Positions 11,108-51,956 of a stretch of DNA of 64,000 nt are shown here, piece after piece; positions within the stretch are counted from its first letter, which is position 1; every line of letters begins with the position of its first letter. Location: the NCBI GenBank assembly GCA_002269645.1, contig NIVC01000031.1, positions 1-64,000 on the forward strand. Reading direction: 5' to 3'. Made by a program: the position numbers and the translations under genes. Below the pieces are notes generated by a model. That model made no database searches. It had not been told where the DNA came from and was given only the letters and a program-made list of their open reading frames with translations. Source of the DNA: Macrostomum lignano. Its lineage: Eukaryota.

Positions 11108-11148
11108 GTAAGTGGTTTTTAATATTTTATCTATCTATCTATCTATCC

Positions 11149-11181
<33 letters not shown>

Positions 11182-12301: not shown

Positions 12302-13042
<741 letters not shown>

Positions 13043-13521
13043 AGAAGGTAGTTCCTCTGGATAAAAGCGCTTACCGCGCCCATTGGCTTTCCAGCTGCCT
13101 TAATCGTTTCCGGTGATCTTGTGTGCGTGCTTTCAGCTTGATTGGCTGCGGCAAGCAAGCTCGAAAGAGCTCGCTTCGCTCGCTCTTTCTCGCTATCTAC
13201 TATCTATCTATCTATTTATCTATCTATCTATCTACTTGTATGTGTGGTATGATAAGTTAAATAAGCATAAAATTAAATGTTTAGAAAGTGTGGCGAAAGT
13301 ACACGATCTACATACGCACGTTAAGTTGAGACATGCATAAATGCGTGCGGAAAGACTGTAATAGATCTAGCAAATCTAGGAAAAAAAGTTGAAGTGTTTC
13401 AAATAGGGCACCTTAAATTGATTTTTTCGACAAGTTAATCCTTTGAAGTGTTAATCATTTGTTCGTCACTCAATCCGGGCGACAACTTTGTCAAGCTCTT
13501 CCTCTCTATTTCTCGGAGTCG

Positions 13522-16253
13522 TTAAGCAGAATCGTTGGAAACCCTTTGAGTGTCTCTGCTGGACTCAGATTTTTCTGGCTTCCCTTGGTCTTCATTTAAA
13601 ATCTCATCGGCTTTCGTTGTGTCCTCAGATGTTTCTTGAGACGTGTTCTGAGCTGGTCTCTCTGTTGCGTCCTCAGCTTCTTTCTCAGTTGTGTCCTCCG
13701 CGGGATTCTGTGGTGTGTCCTCAGCTGGTTCCTCAGCTGTGTCCTCAGCTGGTTTCTCAATAGTGTCCTCAGCTGGTTTCTCAATAGTGTCCTCAGCTGG
13801 TTTCTTAATAGTATCCTCAGCTGGTTTCTCTGGTGTGTCCACAGCTGGTTTCTCAATAGTATCCTCAGCTGGTTTCTTAGTTGTGTCCTCAGCTGGTTCC
13901 TCAGGTGTGTCCTCAGCTGGTTTCTCAATAGTGTCCTCAGCTGGTTTCTCTGGTGTGTCCTCAGCTGGTTTCTCAGTAATGTCCTCAGCTGGTTTTTCAG
14001 TGATGTCCTCAGCTGGTTTCTCAGTTGTGTCCTCAGCTGGTTTTTCAGTAATGTCTTCAGCTGGTTTCTCAGTGATGTCCTCAGCTGGTTTCTCAGTAAT
14101 GTCCTCGGCTGGTTTCTCAGTAGTGTCCTCAGCTGGTTTATCTGGTGTGTCCTCAGCTGGTTTCTTAATAGTGTGCTCAGCCGGTTTCTCTGGTATGTCC
14201 TCAGCTGGTCTCTCAGTAGTGTGCTCAGCTGGTTTCTCAGTAATGTCCTCAGCTGGTTTCTCAGCAGTGTCCTCAGCTGATTTCTCAGTAATGTTCTCAG
14301 CTGGTTTCTCAGTAATGTCCTCAGCTGGTTTCTCAGCAGTGTCCTCAGCTGATTTCTCAGTAATTTTCTCAGCTGGTTTCTCAGCTGCTGCATATTCAGA
14401 GTTTTTCGTTGTTGTTTCTCTAGGAGAGTTCTCAACAGGTTTTAGCGTTGAACTTACAGATGTTTCCTTGTTGTTGTGTGCAAAACTAACTGCAATCTTC
14501 TCAATACTTTCCGAGTCATTAGCTGTTTCTGTCTCTGAGTGACTCTCCATTGATTTAGAATTGTCACTTGTATCGTCTACTGTCTCGGAATCATCAGGGG
14601 ATTCTAAATCACCAGCTGTCTTCTCAGCAGCTTCTGAATCATCAGCTGTCTTCTCAGCAGCTTCTGAATCATCAGCTGTCTTCTCAGCAGGTTCTGAATC
14701 ATCAGCTGTCTTCTCAGCAGGTTCTGAATCATCAGCTGTCTTCTCAGCAGGTTCTGAATCATCAGCTGTCTTCTCAGCAGGTTCTGAATCATCAGCTGTC
14801 TTCTCAGCAGGTTCTGAATCATCAGCTGTCTTCTCAACAGCTGTCTTCTCAGCAGGTTCTGAATCATCAGCTGTCTTCTCAACAGCTGTCTTCTCAGCAG
14901 GTTCTGAATCATCAGTTGTCTTCTCAGCAGCTTCTGAATCATCAATTGTCTTCTCAGCATGTTCTGACTCGTCATCTGTATTCTCAGAGGATTCTGAATC
15001 ATCGGCTGTCTTCTCAGCAGGTTCTGAATCATCAGCTGTCTTCTCAGCAGGTTCTGAATCATCAGCTGTCTTCTCAGCAGGTTCTGAATCATCAGCTGTC
15101 TTCTCAGCAGGTTCTGAATCATCAGCTGTCTTCTCAGCAGGTTCTGAATCATCAGCTGTCTTCTCAACAGCTGTCTTCTCAGCAGGTTCTGAATCATCAG
15201 CTGTCTTCTCAGCAGGTTCTGAATCATCAGCTGTCTTCTCAGCAGGTTCTGAATCATCAGCTGTCTTCTCAACAGCTGTCTTCTCAGCAGGTTCTGAATC
15301 ATCAGCTGTCTTCTCAGCAGGTTCTGAATCATCAGCTGTCTTCTCAGCAGGTTCTGACTCATCAGCTGTCTTCTCAACAGCTGTCTTCTCAGCAGGTTCT
15401 GAATCATCAGCTGTCTTCTCAGCAGGTTCTGAATCATCAGCTGTCTTCTCAACAGGTTCTGAATCACCAGCTGTCTTCTCAGCAGGTTCTGAATCATCAG
15501 TTGTCTTCTCAGCAGGTTCTGAATCATCAGTTGTCTTCTCAGCAGCTTCTGAATCATCAATTGTCTTCTCAGCAGGTTCTGAATCATCAGTTGTCTTCTC
15601 AGCAGCTTCTGAATCATCAATTGTCTTCTCAGCATGTTCTGACTCGTCATCTGTATTCTCAGAGGATTCTGAATCATCGGCTGTCTTCTCAGGGGATTCT
15701 GAATCATCAGTTGTCTTCTCAGCAGCTTCTGAATCATCAATTGTCTTCTCAGCATGTTCTGACTCGTCATCTGTATTCTCAGAGGATTCTGAATCATCGA
15801 CTGTCTTCTCAGAGGATTCTGAATCATGGGTTGTCTCCTCAGAGGATTCTGAAACAATTTCTGCCTTATCAGAGGGTTGTGAAACGGTAACTATCTGCTC
15901 TGCTGATTGCGAATCATCAGTCTTCCCCCGTGTCTTTGTCTCGGCTGCAGTATTGGCAGTCCTTTTTGTTTGTTGGTCGCTAGATTTAAAACGATTGCTA
16001 ATTTGAATATCTGAAGCTAAGTGTGGTTTCCGTTGTCGAGCGTTAGTTTTACTCGGAGGACTCTGTTCTGCTGCTTTGCTGTTGTCAATTTTTTTCTGTC
16101 TCAACTGGCTACTCTTGGTTTGGACTGGTTGGCCCAGGGATCGATGCCGATTTTGCTGCTGTATTTGTTGGTGTCTTTCGTCGCTTTTGATGGCAACTTG
16201 ACTTGCGGTTGACTTGTTGGAGTCAGGCTGACTGCTACCTTGAGCATTGGTGT
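13522..16253 (-). CDS. Dynein-like gene terminal exon: ~910-aa acidic low-complexity repeat tail
   Basis: Phase-1 acceptor cttccttcttaccgaAG; open frame to the stop at 13522, in frame with the preceding exon (donor GTGTGT at 16494). Confidence 0.75.
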
Positions 16254-19200
16254 CTTCGGTAAGAAGGAAGGAAAGTGAGGAGGTTAGTACGAGCTAGTGG
16301 TTTAGTTTTGGTTAGTATGGCTAATCTGTATTAGGATGATACCTGGCGCTTGTTATGAATTGAGTTGAAAATTTCAAGCATAGTTTTTTAGTATGAAATC
16401 TACGGTTAGTGTCGTTGATTTGTCTCTATGCTGCTATTATAAAGCGTCCTATTAACGAGCTAAGTAATGAATATAATAAAAACTTGGAACACACCTGCTT
16501 CCTTATCCTTCTCCACGCTTTCTTCCTCTGATTTTTTATCTTCATGAATATCGTCTTTCGGTCCTTCGTCGTCTTGATCTCGCTGCTGCTGTGCGTCGTC
16601 ATTCTTCTGCACCTCCTGCTCGTCCGCATCCTTGCCATCCTCCGCTTTTTCGGTAATGTCGGATACCTCCGGCTCGTACGCTGATCGGTTTTTATCCCCG
16701 TCTGGCTGTTCTTCCTGTTCAGGTTGACTGTCTTTGACTGGCGTGCCAGTCTCGTCTTCCGTCGCAGCCTCGTCCTCGGCAGCTTCATCTCCGATCGGCT
16801 TGGTTCGCTCGAGCTGCAGCGACTCCGGCCGAGTCGAAGCTTGCGGCGAGAACGGTCGGTAGGACGCCTGGTCAGATTCGCGCTTCGAGCTTGGCGCCGA
16901 GGCGCCGTTCTGTTCGGCACCCGTCGAGCCACTGCCCTCCTCGTCGATGCCTTCCAGTCTTTGTTTCTGGCTAGTTTCGCTTTGTTGGTCCCGATCAGCT
17001 GACGCATATTCATCCAGTGGATCGAGCTCGTCAACCAGCGGCGTGCGCACGATGGGCACCCTCGGTCTGGTCGGATAGGCCCCGTCTAAGAAGCCTGGAT
17101 CGAGGATGAAAAAGCCGCGCTCGGTAGCGTCCGGCGGCTTCACGCTGCTCGGCAGCAGAACGGTGGCCACGTGGTGCTGCTTGGACTGTAAATTGTGGGT
17201 GAGACGACAGTATTTTAAACGGCTAATCAGAGATATTACGGAGATATTTCTAAAGGTCCTTTTTCTGCTCTAAATATTCCTGTTTGGAGAAGGGGAGAGA
17301 CGAGTGCATGAGAGCCATTACTGTCCCTGAGCCTTCGCCTAAGATTCATGATTTGGTCAATCTCCAATTTTTGTCGGAAAACATTTCTTTTCGTCGAATT
17401 TTTGACTATCTTGCTGTATGATGCTATCTCCGTAGTGATTTTCCTATGAACTTGATTCACTCACCCAGGTGGTGTAGATCTCGCATTCGTAGAGCTCGTC
17501 GCTGCCCTGATCGTCTTCTACTTGGGCACTCTCGAATAGTACAATGAGTTCGTAGCCTTGCAACGGTGAAATTGTGCATCTGAAAAGAATTTGTTTATAA
17601 AAGAATAAATAATACCACTATGTTAGGATCCCTTTCTTACTGAGCCAAAAGAAAATTGTAAAGAAGCAACAAAAATTCCCGTAAGTCACCTGTCGCTATA
17701 CACCAGCTTTGGTCTGCTTGCAGCTTCATTCCCAGACTCCATCTCCTTGTCGCCTCCGTCGCTGGCAAGCTCCATTCCGCACATGTGCACACCCTCGAGC
17801 CGCAGCGACGAAGAGTTGCCAAATCTGCTGCTGGAACGCACCATGCGACTGTCGCCGCCTCCAGCAGCACCGGTGACAGGTAGAAGCTCGCAGCGTAGGC
17901 GGACATCTTCTAGCCGGCAGCGATGCACTGCTTCGGACAGTGCCAGGCGTTTGTCGAGACGCATGGCGGCCAGCAGGCGTCGGGGCTCGTACAGACCACC
18001 CGGCCACAGACTGCCAATCAGTCCGGTCGGTCGTAGGCGTCTTAGTTGGGCGTGTCGACGTCTGAGTCGCTCTAGCCAAGCTTTCAGTGGCAACGAGTTC
18101 GGTTGCTCGTTGCGGTGCAGCCAGTCTTCAGGCACCAACTCGATGGCCAGTCGGCTAGCGGACGCGGCAAGAGCCGGGGGCAAGTTCGCCAAGCCGGCTG
18201 GCAGATGACGGCGAAGCTGTTGAACATCGCGACCTACAGCTAGGATTTGGATTGTACACGGCGCACTCTCGCTGTACAGCTTCTTCCACGGCTGGCGATC
18301 TGGTTTGCTGATGATCGGTAAACGAACCAGCTGACGACAATGATGTCGAGCTGGCAGCTGAGCTCGGCGGATGATAGGCAAAGTTGAACTGTCGAGAGTC
18401 GGCTTCGCTGGTGAAGCGAACCAGCGGTGGTAGCTGCTCAGCTACCAAATCCAGCACTGTGAACAGCTTTGCCAGACGACTTGCCGGACGAATCTCGAAT
18501 TCGAATACCGACGGTAAAGATGACGAAGAAGAATTTAGTGTTAGCGACGTGGACGGCGGAGGACTATCGCTGAGCCATGTTGCGTAGAGGCGCTGCATGC
18601 AGGCTGCAAAGGCCTGGCCAGCCGGTTCGCCAGTCCGAGCGGAAGTCTCCCAGGGCAGGAGTTTCAGCAGTGATTTTTGGGCGCCCAGTCGCGTAGAAAG
18701 TCGAGCGTCTCTACACCGTTAGGCGACGGCGGAGGGCAAAGGCCGCTAGCTGACGCTTCCGTAAGCCAGAACCGCATCAGCTTCCTGGTGTCCTGACCGC
18801 TGTGCAGGTGCTCATACAGTCGGCTCATAAGATTGCTCTCCGAGGATTCGCTGGTCTCTTCAGCGGACAATAGTCTAGCCAGTTTGGCAAGAGTAGCGTC
18901 GCCCAAAATCTGCCAGCGGCTGAAGTGACGGGCCCCCAAGCGTTGTGCGTAGGCCGCCAGCGCGTGCACGTAGCCGAACATCAGAATTTTGGCGTCGTTG
19001 TCGAGCTGAGCGGCGCGAATCTGCGGGAAGAATTTTTTAACAGTAAGGCGTTTTATTATACATGAACAAGCGACTTTCAGAGGAAGTGTTCACCACCTCA
19101 GATCCGGTTTCTCTACGAACAAATTCAAATCTGTATTGAATAAAAACCATTGGGTTATGAACGCTCTATCACGGATGGTTCTGATTTTGCAACTTAAGAT

Positions 19201-22200
19201 GTTGCCTTGTTTAAAATACTTATATTTGTCAAGTCTGGCATATTAAATCCTGTTGCCAATAGGAAAAACGCTAGCTTCACCTGCTTAAATGCCGCTTCTC
19301 CAGCAAGCAGCAGCTGCCGATCGCAGTTGCCACCAGCTTTAGCATCGGTCGACTCCTCCTCCGGTCGGATACCATCAAGATAGTCGGAGCTGATTACTCG
19401 CAGGTGCCGAATCAGCGTAGCCGGCAACGCGGCACCGGAGCCCACCTGATAGGTAATCCAAACTGTTGGCGACTGCTGCTGCTGCTGGCTACCTTTCTGC
19501 TCTTCATCCGGTTGTTGCTGCTCTTGCTGATCCGGCTGTTTATCGCCGGAGACTGTCGCTTCGTCGCTTTGGAACAGAAGTCGCAGCTTCCTCTCGAGGC
19601 GTTGAAAACCACTCCGGCTGCCGCAGTGAGCGTCGCGCAGCAGTACCCACGGCTGGGCACCACCGTCAGCTGAATTAAACACTCTCTCCAGTTGGCTGAG
19701 TGCCTGCTGTTCTGAACGCGAACCGTAGTCAATGACAACTAGCTGGCGACCTTTGATTTGGGCCGCTTTGTCAAGCAATTCAGTGACGTCGCGTCGCGAG
19801 TAGAAGGCTGAATCGCGGTAGGTCTCGCGTGTAGCGCAGCTGGGCAACAAAACCAATGTTCCGAAGCAGCGGGGACCTAGACCGGTCTCCAGATCTTCGA
19901 GGAATTCGGTCAGCGGAGGCAGCATCAGCGTCATTTCTTCCAACGGCTTGTTCGCTGCTGCATTCGATTGAATAAATTAATGGGAGAGCATGCGTTTATA
20001 TGCGATTTGAGATTTTTTAGTCTAAGACAAACTGCAAAGGACTAATTCTGAAGTAGACTATTTACTACAACACCAAAGTATCAAACGAACCTGTGTCCGA
20101 TTTTTGTTGCTGCTGATTATTTTCTAGTTGCTCCTCTTGTTGAACTTCGTCAGCCGAAGCGTTACGGGCGGCTGCCGAGGCAGCCAAAAACTCTTCAATG
20201 CCTGCGAGCAGTCGATCCGGTCTGAGCAGCTTCAACAGCAGCAGATCGCACAGAAGTAAAACTCTCGGCTCGAGATCATCGCGCTGACTAGTTCGCCTTG
20301 AACTGAGCGCTGCCAGCGTAGCGCTTTCGGCTGCTCCTGTGCAAAATTTACTCCAGAAGGAGTCCTCATCCTTAGCCACGGCCTCGTGCAAGTCGACCAG
20401 GGTCCGTCTAAGCTGCTGAGTGCAACAATGTCATCCCATCGATCGGCTGGGCAGAAAACTGGACGCTGAAGTCCACTGGTATCTGCTGGGATGGAGCTTC
20501 GAATGCCCCTGTCCGAGTACGCTGAAACCAGGAAAAAAGACTTCTAAAAAACCGAGACCATCAAGCCAACTGCCGAATTAGTTAGTTTGCAGAAAGGTTT
20601 TGGACAGCCAGTAAGCAAGCAGTTATGGATATTTATACAAACACGCACTCCCTCAGCGTGCACTGCGGTCTGATTTGAGAGTCAGACGGACCACCCGCAG
20701 AGCTACTTCCCCCCACCTACTGACTACCGAGCCAACTCACCTTCAAACAGAAAGTCCAAGTACCCATCTGGAATTCCTGTCACACGCGGTAGCTCTGTCA
20801 GCCGAAGTAGCAGACCGAAGAGCAGCTGATCCTCGTGAAACAGTGACGGTCCGAACCGATGATAGACACCGTTGCGAAGGCGCGTCAGCGCTTTGTCGGT
20901 CCAACCGTCTGGAGGCTCTGAAGCGTCTTGCTGCTGCTGCTCTGGCTGACTCTGCTCATATCCATCTTCAGCTGACTTTTCGCCCGTTTCGTTGTTTTCG
21001 TCGTTGGCTGTTTTTTCGTCTCGCTTCTGTAGCTGTTTCTCAGGTTTCGCAAGCAGCTCAGCTTCGTCGAATTCAATTTCAGTCTCTAGCTCGTCATCTT
21101 CGTTGGAGCTAGCCGCTGCTGCTGCGCTAGCGGCTGCAGCTGCTGATGCTTCGAGTTCGGCAGCAGCAGCTGCCTCTTCGGCATCTGGTGGCAGCACGCG
21201 TCGAGAGCGAAGAGAGCCGCGTTTAGTTAGGTAAGCTTCAAGCGGTTGCAGAAGCTCCACGCGCCTGCCAGCAGCTCGACCAGTGATTTCTTGCATGAGA
21301 CGGTCGCGCTGCTCAGTGGCTTTAGCCGAGAGCACCTCCTGGACAAAAGCTTCGTCGTCTGCGAAGAGAAAACATAGGAAGTTGTGGGTTTATGAGGTAT
21401 ATTTTTTCTAACTAAGTAGCCTTTCATTAAATAATGTATGGAAAGTAAGATAAATAATGCTTACTCTCTTCTCCTTCTAAAATTTTGTAAGCAGCTTCAT
21501 CTGACGGCCCCTCGTCGCCTTGGATGGACTTGCGACGTTCCTCTGCCGTCGCCTTCGACTCGTCCTGTTTAGATACCGATTTGGCAGTTTTTTTCTTGAC
21601 CAGCGTTTTCTTCAAACTGCCCGATTCCATCACCTCTTCGAAGTCTTCCGGCAGAGGTTCACCATCAGGGTCAACAGCCAGGTCGAATAGTCGCAGGAAT
21701 TCATGTAGTGGATAGCGGTACTCAAACTGGAGCACACCGAGGCCGCGCAGCGCATTGTACACGTCGGCTGCAGCGGCACCGAGACCGGCGGCCAAATCGC
21801 GACGCCGTTCAACGCCCGATGCACGTCGTTGCTCGCACCTAGTAGCGGCAGATACGGCGTCGATTCGATTGGCGGTGTCACTCATCGCTTTCATGCTGTC
21901 CTCACTCCACAGAGATTGAGAGTTCAGAGCCCCAGCTAGTTGGCTGCGTATCCGACGGACCAGGGCAGCCAGAAGGACTCGCAGTCTGGCTACTCGGTCA
22001 AGCGACGTCGCACGTTCCGCCAACTGGTCTGGCCAGAGTTTTGCAAAGGCGCGACGTTTCAACGTCTCGCCAAGACTTTCGCGCGACGCAACGCAATTAA
22101 CCAAAGTCAGCTGGCTGCTGAAGTCTGGGCTGAGTAGGCGCTGCTGGGTGGCACCGGTGGCGAACATGGGAAGGAAATTGCGGCCGCAGAGCATCTTGCG

Positions 22201-37200: not shown

Positions 37201-40200
37201 AGTGTCCTTCTCCTGGCCACTGATCCTTTCAATCTGAGGCTCGATTTTTTGCAGAAATTCGTCCAACTCGCGTAGTGTTACAAGCACCTGCTCAGTCAGG
37301 TAAGACGTGAATTGGTACACCCATTTATTGGCTAGTGTAATCAGCACTTGCTTCAACGGCCGCATGTTGATTAGTAGCCAACCCTGCAGGGTGAAAAAGT
37401 AGAGAAGCACGTGAAAGTTTTAGATAGGATAATCCTGGATAATACTCGTAAATTAACATCGCAACAGAACTTTACCTGATTGCTGCTATCTGGCATCTCC
37501 TGGATTTCCTGTCTAGCCTCCAGGTAGAGTTCGATTTCGTCCTGGAATTCGGCTAGCGACGGCACACAAGTGCCAGCTTGGCCAGACGATTTCGGCGTCA
37601 GGAAGGCTCGCTCGCCAAGCGAGAGCTCGCCGCCTCCAGCTTCGGCGTCCATGTTCTCCTCCTGCTGGGCAGTCAAACGCGATCTCACTGAGCTCGGCCT
37701 CGATCTGGACGTCTGAAATACCGTCGACGAGGCGTTTTGCATCGATCGACTAGGCGTTCGAGCCGGGTTTGGCGATGCTCGACCCTGAAGGAACTGTTGA
37801 AAGGTTTCAGCGATATCCGGCACCCATAGGTAGCGATAGTCGTTCAGGTACTCCACGTACTCGATGCAGTTGGCGGAGTTATTCACCACCGCTTCGAGAA
37901 TCTTAGCGCGAGCGTCGGTAACTTCGACATCGGCTAGGATCTTGTCTAGGAACGGCGCTCGCTCCTCCTTAGTTAGTTGATCATCGTTTTCTGGCAGATC
38001 GGCCAGTAAGTTTGTTAGGAGACCAGCTCGACTCAGGAAGTCAGTAATCCAGCTCTGAGCCATCTCTGTGACGCTGCTCTCGTAGCTGAACTCGTCCAAT
38101 GGCGGTCTGAAGCTGATGCGGCACTGGACCAGGTCAAGTCTGACAGTCAGGATCGGCGCAGTTGGGTTGTGCGGCCCGGTGAGCCCCGCTAGCGCCAGGC
38201 AGTTGGCCATGTTGTCCAGGCTAGTCATGACCGACTCTTTGAGCTGGGCGAACACGATGTCTTCATTGATAACACGAACGTAGGCTAGCCAAACTGGGGA
38301 GGCCTTGCTGATGCTCAACGATTGGAAGCTGGACTCGACTAGCGCGTGGATTCGATTGTTGCTTGGCTGCATTCGAGCCTCCAGACTGTCAGTGAGCTGT
38401 CGGTGCATGAGTTTGAGCTGCTCTGGTTCGTAGCTGACGCCCGGCTCGCGACCCTACAATATGGTCAATGTATTGGAGTTCCGTAGTTGTGTGCTGAACT
38501 CGCATGCAAACAAACACTTTACCTAAGAGTTTTGGCCTTCATGCTCATTACTTTATTTTCAGGCTTTCATTATATTTTATAAATGGCGATTTAATTTTCT
38601 AGCTACCCATCGAAGTCTGAGCCTTACCTGAAAAATATCCAACACTCCGGACGTCCACGCGTCGGCAATTGATCGAATCTCGTCGCAGTTGCTCTTCAAA
38701 GTTCTCAGCGTCTTAGCCAACAGTTCCAGCACCAGAACGTGCGAACGCTCGACAAAGTCAGCCGACTCCTCTAACTTCCAGGTGTACGCGCTGCACCCCT
38801 GTCGGAATAGTTGCTGAGCGTCGAGCACGTGACTCTGGAGCAGGAAGAACTCGGACTCGGTGAGGCTCTGCATGATGCCGTTGTACGTGGCAACGATGGT
38901 GTCCAATCGGGCGGCCAGGGTGCGCAGCTTGTCCAAGTCCGTCAGGCGAGCCAGTCGACGACCAGCCGCGGTCAGGCCGAGGTTGAACGGCTCCCCGGTC
39001 ACGTGACGCATCTCGCGCAACAGTCGCACCAGCCTCGGATCCAAGTTGACCTCGTACTGATCTAGGTCACCAGTCTCCTTGCACACTAGCAGAGAGTTCT
39101 TCATGTAGTCGAACAGAGAGTCGGTGACGCCGTTTTGCCACTCGCTAACCAGTGCAGCCTCCTCGCTAGTCACCTGTTCGAACACCTCGGCGTAAAGGGT
39201 CTTAAGCTGGTAGCCCAGCTCGCCAGTAAGCATGTGCGGCGACACCTTGTGAATTTTGAGCCACGGCTGCTCCAGACGCTGTCGTAGGCCGCGCAACCAG
39301 TACAGCGTCGAGACGAACCGCGGCATGTGTCGGATCGGCGGTGGGTTAGCGCGCTGACTGCGGAAGATCTCCTGCACCACCATCAGATCGTCAATAAAAC
39401 TCTTCACTATTAGCTCGTCCTTGTCTTTGAGAACCTCCTGGTAAAAGGTAAAAGTAGGAAATGTGGACTTTAACAAAATTTTTAATAAGTTGAAAAGTTG
39501 AAAGTGTATCGCACAAAAGTGAGTTCACAGATGGAGACCAGTTGAAAACGAGCTCAGGATCTCAGAACTCAGATCTTGACATGTATCTTAAGTCGTTAAT
39601 ATCGTTTTAGCCACACATTAAGAATTGCTCTCACAACCGCTGGGGTCTGCTCACCTACCTGTACAATTTCTCGTCCGCTGATGCCCTCGAAGACCTCCAG
39701 TAGTCGTAGCTGAGCCAGCACTGTTGGGCACTGTTGCAGACTTTGGCTAAGAATTTTGGCCAGACAACGTTCGAGTTCCTGTAAGATTTGAATGATATTT
39801 GACATAAATTTAAAGCTTTGAGATAAATTATTTGGATCCTGAAAATATATATAAATTTGTACTGTAAAATATTAGTACTTTTGAGTCAGTAAATAAAAAA
39901 ATGCGTTTAGTAACTGTTTTGTTAGTAATATCTTGAAAATTCGCGTGCATTCAAATTTGACTTCGGTGGAACGTTTTTTTACATGAAATCGTACTTAATT
40001 TGGTACATGAAAATTCTTTTTTTAATTTTGACATCTATGGATGCCTGTAATTCAAACGGGGAATTTAATAATAATGGTTGTTAGTACTGCAAAGGACTTA
40101 CAGTACGGCAACGGGAAGTGTCTGGCTCAAGGACCCCCGACGAACCCCCGACCTTCAAGTGGCGAGCCTGACGTGGCTAGAACCACGTAAGACACAGAGT

Positions 40201-43200
40201 ATATTTCAACCCCGCTAATAGGAAATGGCAATAAAAATTGAAAAGCTAAAGTCTAATTCCTGACATCGTAGTGATGATTTATTTAGTAGCTAGTAAACAC
40301 TGACGCAAAACAGGAATTTTCTGGCGGATTTTAGTACAACAAATTCATTTTAAAAGTCAAACCTACTCCTTCGGTATATTTTCCACCGTCCTGAAAATGC
40401 AGTTTTTATATAGTTTTTCTCGTAGATTTTAAAAAAAATGCTATTAGATTCTGTTTACTGGCATACTACTGATCAGTCAGTAGCCCTGTTGTGCGTTTTG
40501 TGTGCGATTTTGTGATTTAAGTATCAATTGTGTGATGTGAATTGGCAACCGATTTCATAGGTAAATTATTTCTTCAAGCGACCATAACATTTATTCAAGA
40601 GCTATCATTCCTAGCAGTATGCCGTGACAATAAATACAGCGACAGTGACAAAAGTACAATTTGACAGATATCATATAAGTGCAATTACAATTTTGCAATA
40701 TTTCCAAGTCCTTGCGTATAAAATATTGCATCTAAATAACTTACTTTTTGCAAAGTTGAAGACTTACCAACAGGTTATACAGATAATTGCAGACCTAAGT
40801 TGTCTTTGTTATGTTTATAGTAGAAGATTTATTAGATTAGATTTCTGCGATAGTTAGGAATCTTTAGGAATGAAGAGTATGCACAGGCTTCTGCCAGAGT
40901 CTCATGGGGGCTGCTCGTGTGTGCATTTTATATCTTTAAAACTCTGTATTTGAAATGCGTGCACACTCACACACTGTAGTTACTTTCAGAATTACTTCCA
41001 ATGCAAGGGCGTAGCCATGGAAACGTTTATTCAATGGGCTGCGCTTTACAGCGTCTCCTCTTTGTTCGTGTTGAGGCGCCAGCACCAGAGGCGCCAGCAC
41101 CAGAGGCGCCAGCACCAGAGGCGCCAGCACCAGAGGCGCCAGCACCAGAGGCGCCAGCACCAGAGGCGCCAGCACCAGAGGCGCCAGCACCAGAGGCGCC
41201 AGCACCAGAGGCGCCAGCACCAGAGGCGCCAGCACCAGAGGCGCCAGCACCAGAGGCGCCAGCACCAGAGGCGCCAGCACCAGCGCCAGCACCAGAGGCG
41301 CCAGCACCAGAGGCGCCAGCACCAGAGGCGCCAGCACCAGAGGCGCCAGCACCAGAGGCGCCAGCACCAGCAAACGCCAGCACCAGAAGCGCCCAAAGCT
41401 ACTGCAACCAGACTGTAGCTGGAGACCCCTTCTGCACCAAGGCAGCCTGTCGCCAGCACCAGAAGCACCAGAGGCGCCATCGAGGCGCCATACTGCAAAA
41501 CTGTACTGGATGACATGCGAGCACAGATTAGTGCCAGCACTCACCCGAACCACCGTCCGAAAATCGAAAAACGCTCTCTCAAACTCTTTCGGCCGGTTCA
41601 AGTCGAGCACGTTAGTGACCTGCTCAAAGAAGTCGCTCATGGCTGAGCTGTATTTCTCGTGTATCTCTCGAACGATCGCGTCCAATGACTGACTGCCGGC
41701 GCCGCCGATCTCTGCAGCATCGGCCAGAAGGCGAAAGTGTTGCGTTGTCTGCACCAGCTCCAGACAGTCTGTGCAGCGCTCCATGAAGGCGTTGAACAGG
41801 GCGAAGCACGGGGCATTCCTAGCTGGCCAGGGACTGTCCAGCAGCACCGGGTCAACCTGATACTCCGGGTCGTTCAAGTACTCCGACCGTTTCAGTCCGT
41901 GCTTGAAATTGTACTTGTGCGGTCCGTACATCCGAACTGACCAAATCTCCGGCTTTGGCATGTGATTGCTGCAGGTTAAAGTTGAGCATTGGGCATTGGA
42001 TAAGATTGTTAAATCAATAAATCGACAGATTAGAAGTCAAGGCTGGGAAAACCTTCGCCAGCTAAATTGGAACAGGTTATGAATGGGATGTAGGTTAAGG
42101 ATGCATCAAATTGCAGGCACTTAAAAGAAAACTGAATCAAATTTGATGTGCACAGAGAGTACAAAATTTAATTAGTTCACACAAAAATTCATGCACGTGT
42201 TTTCTAAGTTCTTAATTTCATGTAATTTGATGCAACCTCATGTAGGTACTATGAGTAGTACATGCAAAGGCAAATCTGTTAAATTAGTAGCTTAAATAGA
42301 GGGGTGTCTACTGTCTATAAGTTTGAGAAAGTTGTAAACAAAAATTAAACAGGCAAAATAAAAACAAAATGAACTTTCTAATAAACAAACAAAAATTCTC
42401 AGCATCTTTTGACTGAACTTCGGTTTCTCCTTACGCGAATGCATGGTATGAAGACTTGTAGGTTGGATCATTTTTCCTGTAGATAAAAATAGAAATATCA
42501 AGAACTGTTGTTGCGCGGCAGACTGCTAAGTGGCTGACGCTCGCTACAGAGTCAACCCCGGGGTTCGAATAAGTCAAGTATGAGATTAGTCTATGAGCGT
42601 CAAGCATGAGATTAGTCTATGAGCGTCAAGCATGAGATTAGTCTATGAGCGTCAAGCATGAGATTAGCCTATGAGCATCAAGCATGAGATTAGTCTATGA
42701 GCATCAAGCATGAGATTAGTCTAAGCCTTATAGTCTAAGCCTTCTTGAGCGGGAGATCAGTCTGAAAAAGCAAGCATGAGATGTCATGAATCAAGCGAGA
42801 TTTCTATGACGTCAAGATTGTCAGAATCAAGCATGAGATTTCTCTCCATTTGTCGGCCACATTTTCTATGAGCCTCGAGCGTCCGTTAGGCCCTGTGGCG
42901 CCAGAACGAGATGTCTGAGCGCATGAGATTAGTCTGAGCGTCTGCAGAGATCTTGAGCTCAGCATGAGATCTTGAGTCAAGCATGAGATTAGTCTTGCCA
43001 AGATGATTAGTCTATGAGCCAAGCATGGATTAGGAGGCAGAGATTGCAAGCCCGGTTCCGTCTGAGATTAGCCTTTCTTGAGTGCTGATTATCTTAGAGC
43101 GTAGCGTCAAGCATGAGATTAGTCTATGAGCGTCAAGCATGAGATTAGTCTATGAGCGCCAAACATGAGATTAGTCTATGAGCATCAAGCATGAGATTAG

Positions 43201-45275
43201 TCTATGAGCATCAAGCATGAGATTAGTCTATGAGCATCAAGCAGATTCTCGCCTTATAGTTATGACCTTTTTGGATCAAACCTGAAAAAGCAACGATGCA
43301 TAGAGAACTCTCAGATGGCTCACATTTTCTCCAAATTGTCGGCCACATTTTTCTTATTGATGGCGTCGGCCTCCTCGCGGCAGTCCACGTAGGCGCCTTT
43401 GAATGCGGCCCAGAACTTCTGAACGTCTTTCAGCTTGTGAAACGACTGCAGTCGGATCTTTCAGTACGTCCTTGCCAACGTAGTCGATGGCTAGATGGAC
43501 AACTTCGTTAGCCAGCAGTTGGAGCATGATGTCACAGGTGCCGGCTCTGGAGAAGGGGAAGGAAGGCTTGGTGCTGGATTATTCTGCTTACGAATTCCCG
43601 GATTCCCTTAGTGATTCCCTTGGATTCCCGAGATTCCCTTGAGTATTCCCTTTAGATTCCCAATACTTGCAGCAGATACCCTTGGATTCCCTTAAGATAC
43701 CTTGGATTCCCTTAGAGATTCCCACTTGCGGTTACCCTTAGAGATCGCAAGTTTCGATTTCCTTTGAGATTCCCTATTCTTACGGAGCTATTCTTAGATT
43801 CCTTTGGAGATTCCCCTTGGATTCCCTTATAGATTCCCCTGGATGTTTGGAGATTCCTTAGGATTCCCTTGGAGTTTCCCTTGGATTGGAGATTCCCTAG
43901 ATTATAGATTCCCCTTGGATTCCTTAGAGATTCCCTTGCATCGTAGATTTGGATTTAGATTACCTTTTCCCTTTGACTTCCCCTTGGATTTAACTAGAGA
44001 TTCTTGTTGGATTCCTTTAGTTCCCTTAGCATTCCCTTAGAGAAAATCTCTTATTCCCTTAGAGATTCCAACAGATTCCCTTGTAGTTCCCTTAGAGATT
44101 CACCCGAATCTGCTTCATCCAGATACCACGGTAGTCTTCTAAGATTCCCACGGCCAGCCCTGGATTCGCCCTGGTCACTTAGGATTTCAACGACAGCACA
44201 GTTCGCCCTGCGAGGTATCAGAGTTCCCCTGAATTCTTAGCTCTGTGGATTCGCCTGAAGAACGACAGTTTGACGCCCCTGCGGCGGCTGCTCGGCATTG
44301 CTCGGCCTCGCTAGATGCGTGTACGAAGACCCGTGGCGAGGTCACCTGCGGCGGCAGCTGTGATTGCGCACAGCAGCAGGAAGATACGCAGTAGCATCGA
44401 TGGCCTCGTCAGCGTGAGCCTCCCTGCTGTGGCCTCTGAGAGGTTTTGAGTATGTTTGAGCATGTCTGCGTCAGTCGATTTCAAAATCATGCTGAACAGC
44501 AGCGTAGGGGCTGGCCGCGAACACCCCTCCAACCAGTGCCCCCACAAAATAAGAGTCAGGGGCACCCACAAAGAGACAGGGGCACCCACCAAGAGACAGG
44601 GACGCCCACCAAGAGACAGGGACGCCCACTAAGAGACAGGGGCGCCCACCAAGAGACAGGGGTGCCCACCAAGAGACAGGGGCGCCCACCAAGAGACAGG
44701 AGCGCCCACCAAGAGACAGGGGCGCCCACCAAGAGACAGGGGCACCCACCAAGAGACAGGGGCGCCCACCAAGGGACAGGGGCTCCCACTAAAAGACTTT
44801 GGTCGATTCTCACATAGAACCCCTCTTTGATTTCCCTCTGTAGTTCACATAAAATAAAAATTTTGTGTTGAAATAATCCCAAAATAGATGCATCGAAGGT
44901 TGCATATTTCACGTACTGATATTTTCTGGCGTTATTTTAATAGGACTCTTCTTGAGGAAGAAGACAGATTTCCCTTGGAAATCGTACGGTGGATACAGGG
45001 ACACCTGCAAAGCTCCGTTGCGTCTGTAGGCGTACAGCTTCTTGACGTCCTCATTGTCGATGAACTCGTAAAATGCGAGTCTAAAATAATATTGGATATA
45101 AAAGTTTCAGTACTATATAAGCATCAGCATTATCAGCAGTGACTTAATTAGATGGCAAAAATGCGCAAACATTCTTACTTGTATTCATCTTGTTCAATGA
45201 GATTTTTTGTTTCTGGATAGTTGCTTGCACCGCGAACTCCAATTTTCTTTCGAACCATTTCACACACTCATCCAT
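13522..45275 (-). CDS. Giant divergent axonemal-type dynein heavy chain-like protein (multi-exon), AAA1-degenerate
   Basis: Exons traced by GT-AG and phase (5' to 3'): 45179-45275, 44917-45080, [garbled ~44100-44450], 43324-43546, 41545-41968, 39659-39778, 38628-39437, 37476-38453, 36363-37383, 36032-36204, 35629-35679, 34745-35201, 32815-34403, 31827-32730, 29443-31706, 28233-28484, 27501-27725, 26603-26845, 24973-~25175, 22914-24895, 22674-22836, 22431-22582, 21465-22226, 20741-21358, 20091-20521, 19281-19954, 17690-19020, 17465-17579, 16495-17185, 13522-16253 (~19.8 kb CDS). Motifs: DHC_N1-like tail, RAKFPRFNFLSAEDL (DHC_N2), YGWEYIG, GPSGVGKT, GPRGCGKS, FVDDLN, RSHYVFSLRTLSTVF, MTBD-like helices, ECEIY...RGFFILDP C-terminal domain. 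Confidence 0.92.
13720..14390 (-). repeat. Coding 24-bp tandem repeat (EKPAED(T/I)T)n, ~27 units
   Basis: Visible periodicity in DNA and protein. Confidence 0.9.
14600..15850 (-). repeat. Coding 30-bp tandem repeat (SEPAEKTADD)n, ~40 units with higher-order blocks
   Basis: Unit GAATCATCAGCTGTCTTCTCAGCAGGTTCT on the + strand; the block ESSENTDDESEHAEKTIDDSEAAEKTTDD occurs three times. Confidence 0.9.
22914..24895 (-). CDS. Dynein-like exon: end of AAA4, stalk coiled coils and microtubule-binding domain
   Basis: GVRRNFRICL, FPVLISTINFIWLQHW, then DKDSLAQLRAEQKPTPEMQQLMEAVILAL...TWQKGAKRQMANIDRFLEELQRF...ACQSLAKWIGGVARY (MTBD pattern), and AAGLVTYLGRFQQEFRQ. Confidence 0.9.
28261..29673. repeat. 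Near-identical tandem duplication (~703 bp x2) inside the dynein-like gene
   Basis: 28261-28963 matches 28973-29673; 9-bp linker CGCCTGGCG; a 2-nt difference near 29000. Confidence 0.95.
29443..31706 (-). CDS. Dynein-like exon: AAA2 and AAA3
   Basis: Walker A GPSGVGKT (31054-31077) and GPRGCGKS (30025-30048); Walker B-type LRLDG and FVDDLN. Confidence 0.92.
31827..32730 (-). CDS. Dynein-like exon: degenerate AAA1
   Basis: YGWEYIGSAER...NLAVAAGRPLYCVACSPEL...FEGLTTADGIWLCLRSVDSL aligns by eye with canonical YGYEYLG...GPAGTGKT...LGxxxYVFNCS...GLAQTGAWGCFDEFNRI, but GKT and DE are absent. Confidence 0.85.
32815..34403 (-). CDS. Dynein-like exon: linker (DHC_N2) with a large acidic insertion
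   Basis: RAKFPRFNFLSAEDL, HIGKLFENV, GIRSRLGEELPL, WLGDL. Confidence 0.88.
36363..37383 (-). CDS. Dynein-like exon: tail/neck (outer-arm beta-like)
   Basis: GWLLINMRPLKQVLITLANKWVYQFTSYL...AMKPRHWKQLVRLTG...TLGELLKLGL. Confidence 0.9.
38628..39437 (-). CDS. Dynein-like exon: DHC_N1 tail
   Basis: HMPRFVSTLYWLRGLRQRL, YEVNLDPRLVRLLREMRH. Confidence 0.88.
40080..40195 (-). mobile_element. tRNA-derived SINE-like fragment (intronic)
   Basis: Minus strand GTGGTTCTAGC...GGGGGTTCG followed by TCCTTGAGCCAGACACTT, resembling a SINE head plus core. A similar head ending in a B-box GGTTCGAAT lies at 42514-42570 (+). Confidence 0.4.
41074..41400. repeat. Intronic 15-bp tandem repeat (GAGGCGCCAGCACCA) x ~21
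   Basis: Direct inspection; lies beyond the donor at 41544. Confidence 0.95.
42575..43245. repeat. 26-bp minisatellite (CATGAGATTAGTCTATGAGC(G/A)TCAAG), two clean arrays around a garbled middle
   Basis: Direct inspection. Confidence 0.85.
43590..44100. repeat. Degenerate GATTCCCTT(A/G) low-complexity repeat
   Basis: Direct inspection. Confidence 0.75.
44557..44792. repeat. 20-bp minisatellite (GGGCGCCCACCAAGAGACAG) x ~12
   Basis: Exact 20-bp period. Confidence 0.95.

Positions 45276-47251: not shown

Positions 47252-51956
<4,705 letters not shown>

What the first reader, a model, noticed from the sequence alone, without database searches (positions are those of the whole stretch)
13522..45275. 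Giant dynein heavy chain that appears motor-dead but keeps its microtubule-binding stalk
Seen: at AAA1 the canonical GPAGTGKT is replaced by SDNSDSGSSGGSME (~32445-32490) and Walker B CFDEFNR by CLRSVDS (~32290-32320). The AAA4 P-loop (GVGGSGKQ in outer-arm chains) reads AEGNPGIS (~26750-26790). AAA2 and AAA3 P-loops are intact, but their Walker B segments (LRLDG, FVDD) lack the catalytic Glu. Tail, linker, stalk/MTBD and C-terminal domain are all recognisable, and exons up to 2.3 kb are fully open. Established: AAA1 hydrolysis drives the dynein power stroke. Inference: this is a constrained pseudo-ATPase dynein acting as a static microtubule cross-linker, brake or scaffold in cilia or sperm, not a motor. 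It may or may not be related to atypical chains such as DNHD1.
Basis: partly seen in the sequence, partly recalled or inferred. Interest (0 to 1): 0.8.

Follow-up and report, generated by a model that had tools for sequence, protein, structure and literature searches.

The report
Flatworm class-13 motor-dead dynein chain
This is a Macrostomum lignano (flatworm) copy of a catalogued but barely studied animal family of giant dynein heavy chains that descends from the outer-arm beta chain.

Summary
A minus-strand dynein heavy chain gene runs 45275->13522. Its AAA1 Walker A/B and AAA4 P-loop are replaced, and its AAA2/AAA3 P-loops are intact.

The window is Macrostomum lignano contig NIVC01000031.1:1-64000. 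The nearest relatives are 5.2-5.9 kaa chains of gar, bichir, lungfish, salamander and a hemichordate. All lack AAA1 and AAA4 P-loops, so the loss is ancient and maintained.

The gene meets the three described traits of Kollmar's (2016) class-13 dynein:
- an outer-arm-beta-type tail;
- an AAA5 about 200 aa too long;
- a low-complexity acidic C-terminal extension (about 1,100 aa here).

The stalk/MTBD has canonical length and predicted fold. It is not DNAHX (alpha-derived, broken stalk), and by the literature it is not DNHD1 (class 11).

The 'missing Glu' in AAA2 and AAA3 is the normal axonemal state and says nothing about activity.

Two Macrostomum copies differ by 38 synonymous and 16 non-synonymous changes, which indicates purifying selection. 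The window copy nevertheless lacks about 260 tail codons, carries a 710-bp tandem duplication, and has a wrecked AAA4 exon. This is either early decay of a redundant copy or PacBio assembly error.

The most likely role is an ATP-independent, microtubule-binding partner in an outer-arm-like complex, possibly with DNAHX. That role is untested.

The parts
44912..45275 (-). Start codon and first two tail exons (45275-45204 and 45106-44912).
   Evidence: tblastn of homeolog model P0154 (aa 1-89) and of the gar and lungfish proteins from their own residue 1.
43570..44651 (-). Place where tail exons for about aa 90-349 are missing in this copy. It is filled with minisatellites; a degenerate exon remnant lies at 44208-44104.
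   Evidence: The region has no counterpart of L001 10630-12850. Tandem Repeats Finder (TRF) arrays were found.
37422..43536 (-). Remaining tail exons (DHC_N1): 43536-43323, 41961-41545, 39778-39659, 39437-38628 and 38453-37476.
   Evidence: Pfam DHC_N1 E=3.6e-35 and 1.7e-11. Exact mapping of P0004. A PDB search of the tail hits outer-arm beta chains best.
32815..37383 (-). Linker (DHC_N2) exons 37383-36364, 36202-36032, 35201-34746 and 34401-32815. The last carries a roughly 350-aa acidic/Q-rich insertion (about 34020-32964).
   Evidence: Pfam DHC_N2; P0004 mapping; composition.
31828..32730 (-). AAA1 exon with a dead nucleotide site. The Walker A position reads SDSGSSGGSME (32446-32487), the Walker B position reads CLRSVDS (32290-32310), and the sensor-I region carries an insertion.
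   Evidence: The splice junctions are confirmed by 100% identity to P0004 across them.
29443..31707 (-). A single 2,265-nt exon covering the AAA1 lid, AAA2 (GPSGVGKT, LRLDG) and AAA3 (GPRGCGKS, CFVDD).
   Evidence: Pfam AAA_7 E=1.4e-40 and Dynein_AAA_lid E=2.9e-19; PDB best hits DNAH9 and DNAH17.
28291..29673 (-). Perfect tandem duplication: 28291-28963 equals 29001-29673, with a 37-bp junction. It spans the end of the AAA3 exon, the intron and the AAA3-lid exon, and is absent from the homeolog.
   Evidence: The GenBank model bridges it with a non-GT/AG 'intron' at 28999-28290.
28233..28487 (-). AAA3 lid exon (the copy that continues correctly).
   Evidence: Pfam AAA_lid_1 E=2.7e-12.
26582..27725 (-). 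AAA4 exons 27725-27501 and 26845-26582. The P-loop position reads AEGNPGIS (26747-26770).
   Evidence: Pfam AAA_8 weak.
24972..25173 (-). AAA4 Walker-B exon, damaged in this copy. The acceptor AG is lost and there are +1, -2, -2 and -2 indels relative to the homeolog. A partial duplicate of this exon lies at about 25500-25333.
22870..24894 (-). About 675-codon exon: AAA4 lid, stalk CC1, MTBD (about 24159-23842), CC2, and the start of AAA5 with an acidic insertion (about 23448-23094).
   Evidence: Pfam MT E=2.1e-22 over profile positions 3-340 of 344. 37-38% identity to orthologues with 3 gaps. AlphaFold2 (AF2) pLDDT 88 and a Foldseek full-length match to dynein stalks.
17690..22680 (-). AAA5 (enlarged), AAA6 and the C-terminal cap: coding blocks 22680-22417, 22278-21430, 21389-20727, 20543-20068, 19976-19197 and 19089-17690. 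1-2 bp deletions relative to the homeolog lie at 20391, 18684 and 18251.
   Evidence: Weak phmmer and tblastn matches to orthologues; Dynein_C E=1.4e-06; motif reading by eye; indels. Exact splice sites were not resolved.
13522..17269 (-). Low-complexity acidic C-terminal extension of about 1,137 aa (pI 4.1, 31% D+E). It contains 30-nt x ~42 and 24-nt x 32 in-frame tandem arrays. The stop codon is at 13522-13524.
   Evidence: Orthologues also carry non-conserved acidic extensions. Joining to the cap exon is inferred from GT-AG candidates only.

Best explanation
**Identity.** The gene is a Macrostomum lignano member of the orphan dynein heavy chain family that Kollmar (2016) called class 13 (DHC13). 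This family is an ancient duplicate of the outer-arm beta chain (the DNAH9/11/17 lineage).

**Shown here**
- It has a beta-type tail, the part that in outer arms binds intermediate and light chains, pairs with the second heavy chain and docks on the A-tubule.
- It has a recognisable linker.
- Its AAA ring has lost the Walker A and B motifs of AAA1 and the P-loop of AAA4, while the AAA2 and AAA3 P-loops are kept.
- Its stalk and microtubule-binding domain have canonical length and predicted fold.
- Its AAA5 is enlarged.
- It carries a very long acidic, repetitive C-terminal extension.
- The same pattern of dead and live sites occurs in hemichordate, gar, bichir, lungfish and salamander orthologues. 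An ichthyosporean sister sequence shows an intermediate state: AAA1 Walker B lost, P-loops kept.

**Inferred**
- Without AAA1 binding or hydrolysis the chain cannot run the ATP-driven linker swing. It is therefore a pseudo-motor.
- The tail places it in a two-headed outer-arm-like complex.
- Its intact MTBD lets it hold the neighbouring doublet, or a microtubule, largely independently of ATP.
- AAA2 and AAA3 serve as structural or regulatory nucleotide sites.
- The natural partner is the alpha-derived non-motile chain DHC12, probably the same as DNAHX, forming 'dynein-X'.

**This locus.** The window copy shows lesions that are either assembly errors or early decay of a redundant copy.

**Likelihoods**
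- Family assignment: about 0.85.
- Catalytically dead AAA1: about 0.9.
- ATP-independent tether or partner role: about 0.45.
For: **Source and copies**
- The best hit of the exhaustive HMMER search is PAA93228.1 of M. lignano, 100% identical over 1,056 aa.
- Window coordinates equal NIVC01000031.1 coordinates.

**Orthologue clade**
- The next hits are Saccoglossus, Pleurodeles, Protopterus and Lepisosteus, and also Erpetoichthys and Polypterus. They are 5,254-5,930 aa long.
- They are collinear with the window from the start Met to Dynein_C. Identity is 35-50% in tail, linker and stalk, against 21-27% for DNAH11.
- All have only the AAA2 and AAA3 P-loops.
- The AAA1 and AAA4 alignments show shared degeneration and shared indels.
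- Neighbour-joining (NJ) bootstrap support for the clade is 50/50 in two partitions. Chromosphaera is sister at 49-50/50. The clade is nested among beta chains in the tail+linker tree.

**Class-13 traits** (Kollmar, PMC5100056)
- Tail: best PDB matches are outer-arm beta chains at 319, 279 and 167 bits, against 92 bits for DNAH5.
- AAA5: the span is 659-693 aa in the vertebrate orthologues and Chromosphaera, and roughly 830 aa in Macrostomum by hand count of the coding blocks. Canonical chains have 473-484 aa.
- C-terminus: all members carry acidic low-complexity extensions.

**Stalk**
- The span is 391-398 aa against 394-395 canonical.
- The prolines and tryptophans that frame the MTBD are invariant.
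- The AlphaFold2 (AF2) model has pLDDT 88 and gives full-length Foldseek matches to in-situ dynein stalks.

**Constraint**
- The window and homeolog L001 differ by 38 synonymous and 16 non-synonymous changes (pN/pS 0.13, binomial p=4e-13).

**Concept**
- Non-motile heavy chains with degenerate AAA1 are documented for DNAHX and suggested for DNHD1 (bioRxiv 10.1101/2025.01.18.633724).
- A class-12/class-13 heterodimer at outer-arm positions was proposed by Kollmar.
Against: - No reference class-13, DNAHX or DNHD1 sequence could be obtained. The family assignment therefore rests on described traits and on beta affinity, not on a tree that includes the type sequences.
- The trees are simple NJ trees and contain no outer-arm alpha sequences.
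- No expression, localisation, ATPase or microtubule-binding data were available.
- AAA5 and AAA6 are too diverged for Pfam, and their splice sites are unresolved.
- Attachment of the 2.8-kb repeat ORF to the gene is inferred.
- AAA3 keeps Walker A, a DD Walker B and sensor-I Asn, so some nucleotide-driven change cannot be excluded.
- The window copy lacks about 260 tail codons, has a 710-bp duplication, has a disrupted AAA4 exon and has three 1-2 bp deletions. This locus may not make the protein described.
- From my own recollection, not checked here, Macrostomum sperm are aflagellate. That would argue against a sperm-flagellum role in this species.
Confidence: 0.65

Rival explanations
1. The window copy is a decaying duplicate, that is, an incipient pseudogene. 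M. lignano carries several near-identical copies. This one has begun to lose exons and reading frame, while another copy (L001 or a third locus) supplies the protein.
For: - Tail exons for aa 90-349 are replaced by repeats, leaving a degenerate remnant.
- A 710-bp tandem duplication is absent from L001.
- In the AAA4 Walker-B exon the acceptor AG is lost and four indels occur within 90 bp.
- Deletions of 1-2 bp lie at 20391, 18684 and 18251.
- The GenBank model is truncated at both ends.
Against: - Exons from 41961 to 26585 are identical, or differ by one base, from L001.
- L001 has its own frameshifts (+1 near 23860, -1 near 19657) and an N-gap. Both contigs come from a PacBio assembly, so indel errors are a plausible cause.
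- Substitutions between the copies are mostly synonymous.
- All other long exons are open.
Confidence: 0.3
2. It is a member of DNAHX, the non-motile subfamily found in sea-urchin sperm.
For: - The general look is shared: over-long, many disordered insertions, degenerate AAA1.
- The taxon range is similar: aquatic invertebrates, non-teleost fish and amphibians.
Against: - DNAHX is reported to branch from outer-arm alpha (DNAH5/8). Here the tail and AAA2-3 score far higher with beta chains.
- DNAHX has stalk and MTBD insertions and an AAA4S insert. Here the span from the AAA4 small domain to the end of CC2 is canonical (391-398 aa), and the stalk is predicted to be extended.
Confidence: 0.03
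3. It is the flatworm orthologue of DNHD1 (Kollmar class 11).
For: DNHD1 is also said to lack AAA1 Walker B residues and to carry disordered insertions.
Against: - Kollmar separates class 11 (DNHD1) from class 13 and describes for class 13 exactly the traits found here.
- DNHD1 exists in mammals and zebrafish.
- No DNHD1 sequence was available for a direct test.
Confidence: 0.03
4. It is still a working motor, driven by another site (AAA3) or by unconventional nucleotide binding at AAA1.
For: - AAA3 keeps GPRGCGKS, a DD Walker B and sensor-I Asn. AAA2 keeps its P-loop.
- The vertebrate orthologues keep a Gly-Lys in the AAA1 loop, for example GPEGSGKR.
- Linker and stalk are conserved.
Against: - In all studied dyneins AAA1 hydrolysis is required for motility (established knowledge).
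- Every clade member lacks the AAA1 Walker B acidic pair and has a disrupted sensor-I/Arg region.
- The flatworm has no Walker A lysine at all.
Confidence: 0.05

Closest known systems
Class-13 dynein heavy chains (DHC13; Kollmar 2016, Mol Biol Evol 33:3249, PMC5100056)
   Same: - The tail is of the outer-arm beta (class-4) type.
- AAA5 is longer than normal.
- There is a unique low-complexity C-terminal extension conserved only in composition.
- It occurs in animals and is absent from humans.
- It shows very low TBLASTN similarity to canonical chains.

All of these were tested here on the window gene and its relatives.
   Different: - Kollmar states that the ATP sites were not analysed. The loss of the AAA1 and AAA4 sites is therefore an addition.
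- An ichthyosporean sister sequence (Chromosphaera) suggests that the lineage predates animals.
- The flatworm extension (about 1,100 aa) and total length (about 6.5-6.9 kaa) exceed those of the vertebrate members.
- No class-13 reference sequence was available, so membership rests on traits.
DNAHX / dynein-X (Chai et al. 2025, bioRxiv 10.1101/2025.01.18.633724); probably Kollmar's class 12
   Same: - It is a non-motile heavy chain derived from an outer-arm chain.
- AAA1 is degenerate.
- It carries many disordered insertions.
- The taxon range is similar.
- It forms a two-headed complex with a second heavy chain that is still unidentified and has a normal extended stalk.
   Different: - DNAHX is alpha-derived, still binds ATP at AAA1, and has a folded-back stalk, a disrupted MTBD and an AAA4S insert.
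- The window gene is beta-derived, has no AAA1 Walker A lysine, has also lost the AAA4 P-loop, and has a canonical stalk/MTBD.
DNHD1 (class 11; human orphan heavy chain needed for sperm flagella and nodal cilia)
   Same: - It is an atypical heavy chain reported to lack AAA1 Walker B residues and to carry insertions.
- It was once dismissed as a 'ghost gene' but is functional.
   Different: It is a different class according to Kollmar, is present in mammals, and could not be compared directly here.
Canonical outer-arm beta heavy chains (DNAH9/DNAH11/DNAH17; Chlamydomonas beta)
   Same: - The tail is the best match in the PDB.
- Overall architecture is the same.
- The AAA2 'LDG' and AAA3 'DD' Walker B forms are the same.
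- Stalk length is the same.
   Different: - The canonical AAA1 motifs GPAGTGKT and CFDEFNR and the AAA4 motif GVGGSGKQ are absent.
- AAA5 is about 200-350 aa longer.
- There is a large acidic C-terminal extension and there are further insertions.

Membership tests
Class-13 dynein heavy chain (Kollmar 2016) | [quoted passage not shown] | tested here: met
   - PDB phmmer with the tail gives Chlamydomonas beta 319 bits, Tetrahymena beta 279, trypanosomatid beta 199/196 and DNAH9 167. In contrast IAD-f scores 116/108, DNAH5 92 and Chlamydomonas gamma 72.
- The clade is nested among beta chains in the tail+linker NJ tree.
Class-13 dynein heavy chain (Kollmar 2016) | AAA5 domain longer than in other classes. 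| tested here: met
   The span from the end of CC2 to the start of AAA6 is 659-693 aa in the orthologues and roughly 830 aa in the flatworm. Canonical chains have 473-484 aa.
Class-13 dynein heavy chain (Kollmar 2016) | Unique low-complexity C-terminal extension, conserved only in composition. | tested here: met
   - Acidic extensions follow the cap in gar, bichir, lungfish and salamander.
- The window has about 1,137 aa with pI 4.1 and in-frame 24- and 30-nt arrays.
- The splice joining it to the cap exon is inferred.
Class-13 dynein heavy chain (Kollmar 2016) | Groups with reference class-13 motor domains in a phylogeny. | not testable with these tools
   No CyMoBase class-13 sequence could be fetched, and the paper's supplements are not held.
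Class-13 dynein heavy chain (Kollmar 2016) | Restricted to Metazoa. | tested here: inconclusive
   - All named clade members are animals.
- The ichthyosporean Chromosphaera perkinsii is a strongly supported sister and also has the long AAA5.
DNAHX (Chai et al. 2025) | Closest canonical relative is outer-arm alpha (DNAH5/8). | tested here: not met
   Beta chains score far above DNAH5/DNAH8 for both the tail and AAA2-3.
DNAHX (Chai et al. 2025) | Insertions in stalk CC1/CC2 and in the MTBD (folded-back stalk), and a PS2 insert in the AAA4 small domain. | tested here: not met
   - The span from the AAA4 small domain to the end of CC2 is 391-398 aa, against 394-395 canonical.
- There are only 3 gaps against the orthologues over 356 aa, and the H2-H3 loop is shortened.
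- The AF2 model shows an extended coiled coil plus a six-helix MTBD.
DNAHX (Chai et al. 2025) | Reciprocal best hit to L. variegatus XP_041462850. | not testable with these tools
   The sequence was not obtainable. It is not in the PDB hit lists, and the paper's accessions are placeholders.
DNHD1 / class 11 | Sequence orthology to human or zebrafish DNHD1. | not testable with these tools
   No DNHD1 sequence was available. The literature keeps classes 11 and 13 apart.
Canonical outer-arm beta heavy chain (DNAH9/11/17) | Intact AAA1 Walker A (GPAGTGKT) and Walker B (CFDEFNR), and an intact AAA4 P-loop. | tested here: not met
Pseudogene (this locus) | Frame-disrupting lesions and relaxed constraint. 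| tested here: inconclusive
   - Lesions are present.
- The homeolog contig also has frameshifts, and the assembly is PacBio-based.
- pN/pS between the copies is 0.13.

The most novel reading that the evidence does not exclude
Class 13 is the missing second heavy chain of 'dynein-X'. Under this reading animals, and possibly their unicellular relatives, keep a complete motor-dead paralogue of the outer dynein arm. The alpha-derived chain (DHC12/DNAHX) has lost microtubule binding. The beta-derived chain (DHC13) has lost the AAA1 and AAA4 nucleotide sites but keeps a fully competent stalk. The complex would then act as an ATP-independent tether, brake or assembly/transport adaptor. Its presence in a flatworm whose sperm are, to my recollection, aflagellate would point to a role in somatic motile cilia rather than a sperm-only role. 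The ichthyosporean intermediate would record the order in which the sites died: AAA1 Walker B first, then the AAA1 and AAA4 P-loops.
Probability: 0.3. Interest if true: 0.7.

Novelty: new member of a known kind. Interest (0 to 1): 0.45.

Why it matters
Orphan dynein heavy chains were long dismissed as 'ghost genes'. DNHD1 (human infertility and laterality defects) and DNAHX (2025) changed that view.

This finding shows that a second outer-arm-derived family is conserved from flatworms to lungfish, has dead AAA1 and AAA4 sites, and keeps an intact microtubule-binding stalk. That gives a concrete, testable candidate for the unidentified partner of DNAHX. It also offers a natural experiment on what a dynein ring does when only AAA2 and AAA3 can hold nucleotide.

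M. lignano has working RNAi and transgenesis, so the function could be tested there.

The current GenBank models cover less than half of the gene.

Tried and rejected
- **Word-indexed protein searches.** The search with the 747-aa AAA2-3 exon returned nothing, presumably because common P-loop words filled the 8,000-candidate limit. The linker exon gave only three fragments. A clade profile of AAA1 gave only two fragments. These tools also did not return the organism's own proteins.
- **Obtaining DNAHX and DNHD1 sequences.** Neither could be fetched. The DNAHX PDB codes are placeholders, and a text search finds only that one paper.
- **Kollmar supplements.** They are not held.
- **Expression evidence.** A text search for the locus tags found nothing.
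- **Literature on Macrostomum sperm axonemes.** The searches gave nothing usable.
- **Automatic GT-AG junction search for the 3' third.** Results were ambiguous. Three apparent frame changes turned out to be 1-2 bp differences from the homeolog rather than introns.
- **Pfam on AAA5/AAA6 blocks.** No hits.
- **Rfam and tRNA scans.** Nothing found.
- **Rejected: a missed AAA1 exon.** No other Walker motif exists in six frames.
- **Rejected: an assembly artefact of the AAA1 motif.** The motif is identical in three models.
- **Rejected: AAA2/AAA3 Walker B as evidence of inactivity.** These forms are canonical.
- **Not run.** A second structure prediction, of AAA1, was not run. A homology-driven model would not show whether the pocket binds nucleotide.


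Full report
**1. Observation**

The region 45275->13522 on the minus strand holds one very large, intron-containing dynein heavy chain gene.

| Peptide | Coordinates |
|---|---|
| SDNSDSGSSGGSME | 32446-32487 |
| CLRSVDS | 32290-32310 |
| AEGNPGIS | 26747-26770 |
| GPSGVGKT | 31054-31077 |
| GPRGCGKS | 30025-30048 |

Pfam finds these domains:
- DHC_N1
- DHC_N2
- Dynein_AAA_lid
- AAA_7
- AAA_lid_1
- weak AAA_8
- MT (E=2e-22, profile positions 3-340 of 344)
- weak Dynein_C

It finds nothing for the AAA1 exon.

phmmer against the PDB still aligns that exon, weakly but in register, with AAA1 of Chlamydomonas outer-arm chains. GPAGTGKTE falls on SGSSG-GSME and GSWGCFDEFNR falls on GIWLCLRSVDS.

I fixed the splice junctions around the AAA1 exon by eye (32730..31828, then 31707..29443). 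The spliced 1,056-aa product is 100% identical to a database protein across both junctions.

No other Walker A or CFDEFN-like stretch is encoded anywhere in the window in any frame. The degenerate AAA1 is identical in three independent gene models. The 'missed exon' and 'assembly artefact' refutations therefore fail.

**2.

The AAA2 'LDG' and AAA3 'xxDD' Walker B forms are what canonical axonemal beta chains have. DNAH11 reads WIVLDGD and FIDDMN, and protist beta chains are alike. Only AAA1 and AAA4 are abnormal.

**3. Source and relatives**

An exhaustive HMMER search of 1.84 billion representatives gave 2,459 hits.
- The top hit is PAA93228.1 (BOX15_Mlig011306g2) of the flatworm Macrostomum lignano.
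- Sister models come from other loci of the same genome.
- The window is NIVC01000031.1:1-64000 of assembly GCA_002269645.1.

The next-best hits (30-33% identity) are:
- a partial Saccoglossus protein;
- very long proteins of Pleurodeles (5,410 and 5,702 aa), Protopterus (5,930 aa) and Lepisosteus (5,254 aa);
- fragments from Erpetoichthys and Polypterus.

They are annotated 'dynein beta chain-like' or 'DNAH9-like'.

tblastn shows the flatworm gene is collinear with these proteins from their first residues to the C-terminal cap. Identity is 35-50% in tail, linker, AAA3 lid and stalk, against 21-27% for DNAH11.

All of these proteins carry only two P-loops, those of AAA2 and AAA3. In alignments they show:

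| Site | Clade members | Canonical |
|---|---|---|
| AAA1 loop | GPEGSGKR, GPEATGKK, GPERIGKK, GPNWSGRR | GPAGTGKT |
| AAA1 Walker B | CFNGLEQ, CLNGIDQ, CFDSIDR, CLNNIAN | CFDEFNR |
| AAA4 loop | GEGCPxxx | GVGGSGKQ |

They also share an insertion at the AAA1 sensor-I region and an insertion between AAA3 and AAA4.

NJ trees of tail+linker and of AAA2-AAA4 give the clade 50/50 bootstrap support. An ichthyosporean protein (Chromosphaera perkinsii) is its sister at 49-50/50. In the tail+linker tree the clade sits among beta chains (DNAH11, Trypanosoma beta).

Chromosphaera keeps the AAA1 and AAA4 P-loops but has already lost AAA1 Walker B. That suggests stepwise inactivation.

**4. What family it is**

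Kollmar (2016, PMC5100056) defined 17 dynein classes.
- Class 11 is DNHD1.
- Class 12 has an outer-arm class-3 (DNAH5/8-type) tail and a stalk without a typical microtubule-binding site.
- He proposed a class-12/class-13 heterodimer at outer-arm positions.
- He stated that the ATP sites had not been analysed.

I tested the three class-13 traits.
- **Tail.** The best PDB matches are Chlamydomonas beta (319 bits), Tetrahymena beta (279), trypanosomatid beta (199/196), DNAH9 (167) and DNAH17 (131). DNAH5 scores 92 and Chlamydomonas gamma 72. The AAA2-3 exon also prefers DNAH9/17 (199/198 bits) over DNAH5 (119).
- **AAA5.** The span is 659-693 aa in the relatives, and roughly 830 aa in the flatworm because of acidic insertions. 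Canonical chains have 473-484 aa.
- **C-terminus.** All relatives continue beyond the canonical end with non-conserved acidic sequence. The window has about 1,137 aa at pI 4.1, including in-frame arrays of 30 nt x ~42 and 24 nt x 32.

All three traits are met. I could not place the gene in a tree with reference class-13 sequences.

**5. Why it is not DNAHX or DNHD1**

DNAHX (Chai et al. 2025) is a non-motile sea-urchin sperm heavy chain. It branches from outer-arm alpha, has insertions that fold back the stalk and disrupt the MTBD, has an AAA4S insert, and has an AAA1 that still holds ATP. It probably equals class 12; that equation is my inference.

The window gene is beta-like.
- Its span from the AAA4 small domain to the end of CC2 is 398 aa, against 391-395 in the relatives and 394-395 in canonical chains.
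- The prolines and tryptophans that frame the MTBD are invariant.
- An AF2 model built with a 12-sequence alignment has pLDDT 88. It shows two helices of roughly 120-130 residues flanking a six-helix MTBD.
- Foldseek matches it over 350-360 columns to dynein stalks solved in situ.

DNHD1 could not be compared directly. The literature keeps it in a separate class, and it exists in mammals and zebrafish.

**6. Is it constrained?**

At family level, yes. The pattern of dead and live sites and 35-50% identity are shared between a flatworm and vertebrates.

Within Macrostomum I fetched a second, syntenic locus (L001, NIVC01000168.1).
- Exons from 41961 to 26585 are identical or differ by one base.
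- From the stalk onward the copies differ by 38 synonymous and 16 non-synonymous changes. pN/pS is 0.13, and the binomial p is 4e-13 against neutral expectation.

**7. State of this locus**

The window copy differs from L001 in ways that would damage it.
- **(a)** About 2.2 kb holding the tail exons for aa 90-349 is replaced by about 1.1 kb of minisatellite-rich sequence, with one degenerate exon remnant.
- **(b)** A perfect 673-bp tandem duplication (710-bp period) spans the end of the AAA3 exon, an intron and the next exon. The GenBank model jumps it with a non-GT/AG 'intron'. This suggests that the transcript used for annotation lacks the duplication.
- **(c)** The AAA4 Walker-B exon has lost its acceptor AG and has +1, -2, -2 and -2 indels.
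- **(d)** Deletions of 1-2 bp lie at 20391, 18684 and 18251.

L001 has its own frameshifts and an N-gap, and both contigs are PacBio-derived. I therefore cannot separate assembly error from early decay of a redundant copy.

Neither locus has any gene model over the 3' half of the gene. The intact protein would be roughly 6,500-6,900 aa.

**8. Mechanism**

Shown here:
- a beta-type tail;
- a conserved linker;
- AAA1 and AAA4 without nucleotide-binding motifs;
- AAA2 and AAA3 with them;
- a canonical stalk/MTBD;
- an enlarged AAA5;
- an acidic tail.

Established knowledge: AAA1 hydrolysis drives the linker swing and the cycle of microtubule affinity, and beta tails assemble with a second heavy chain and intermediate and light chains on the A-tubule.

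Inferred:
- The chain is a pseudo-motor incorporated in an outer-arm-like complex.
- It binds the neighbouring microtubule largely independently of ATP.
- AAA2 and AAA3 act as structural or regulatory sites.
- Its likely partner is DHC12/DNAHX. The dynein-X complex has an unidentified second head with a normal extended stalk.

Whether it acts as a tether, a brake, a positional marker or an assembly/transport adaptor is open.

**9. Novelty**

The family is catalogued, and the idea of non-motile heavy chains is published.

What I did not find in the accessible literature:
- the class-wide loss of the AAA1 and AAA4 sites with a preserved stalk;
- the ichthyosporean intermediate;
- the flatworm member.

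This is a new member of a known kind, with a useful hypothesis attached.

Noticed in passing
window 28291-28963 and 29001-29673 (junction 28964-29000): A 100% identical tandem duplication inside the dynein gene, absent from the homeolog. The junction is really the continuation of the next exon with a 2-bp deletion. The GenBank model skips it with a non-canonical 'intron' at 28999-28290.
   Followed up: yes
window 43570-44651: Tail exons present in the homeolog (aa 90-349) are replaced by minisatellites: a 20-nt array at 44551-44797 and 12-42-nt arrays at 43594-43921. A degenerate exon remnant lies at 44208-44104.
   Followed up: yes
window 25333-25500: A partial, frame-shifted duplicate of the AAA4 Walker-B exon sits in the preceding intron. 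This stretch (26344-24921) is only 93-96% identical to the homeolog, while its neighbours are 99-100% identical.
   Followed up: partly
P0013 (Chromosphaera perkinsii, EukProt): An ichthyosporean heavy chain is the strongly supported sister of the animal clade. It has the long AAA5, keeps the AAA1 and AAA4 P-loops, but has lost AAA1 Walker B. It is a possible intermediate and would push class 13 outside Metazoa.
   Followed up: partly
window 13522-25147; L001 32205-42204: The deposited gene models stop in AAA4 (this locus) or in the stalk (homeolog). No model covers the stalk, AAA5, AAA6, cap and acidic extension, so the annotated proteins are less than half, or little more than half, of the gene.
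   Followed up: yes
window 41073-41393: A 15-nt minisatellite (21.5 copies, GAGGCGCCAGCACCA) lies within a tail intron. It is open in several frames and easily mistaken for coding sequence.
   Followed up: no
window 47252-50654 (+): The neighbouring gene is saccharopine-dehydrogenase-like (Pfam Sacchrp_dh_NADP in the gene tables of both loci). It confirms synteny of the two copies. Its introns hold long (CTGT)n and other microsatellites.
   Followed up: partly
window 9093-9632 (+) and 5313-5729 (-): Mobile-element debris: a reverse-transcriptase fragment (RVT_1, E=4e-18) and a weak DDE_3 transposase fragment.
   Followed up: partly
window 10164-11199 (+): Two adjacent ORFs appear to encode F5/8 type C (fucolectin-like) galactose-binding domains. 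The second has E=8e-11. The first is similar by eye but has no Pfam hit.
   Followed up: partly
window 60766-63224 (+): ORFs with a weak match to sodium:neurotransmitter symporters (SNF, E=0.005, below the cut-off). This may be part of an SLC6-like gene.
   Followed up: no
window 4276-4886, 6915-7409, 12267-13064: Long microsatellites, (TCTATC)n and runs of T/A-rich triplets, give spurious ORFs of 150-265 aa on both strands.
   Followed up: no
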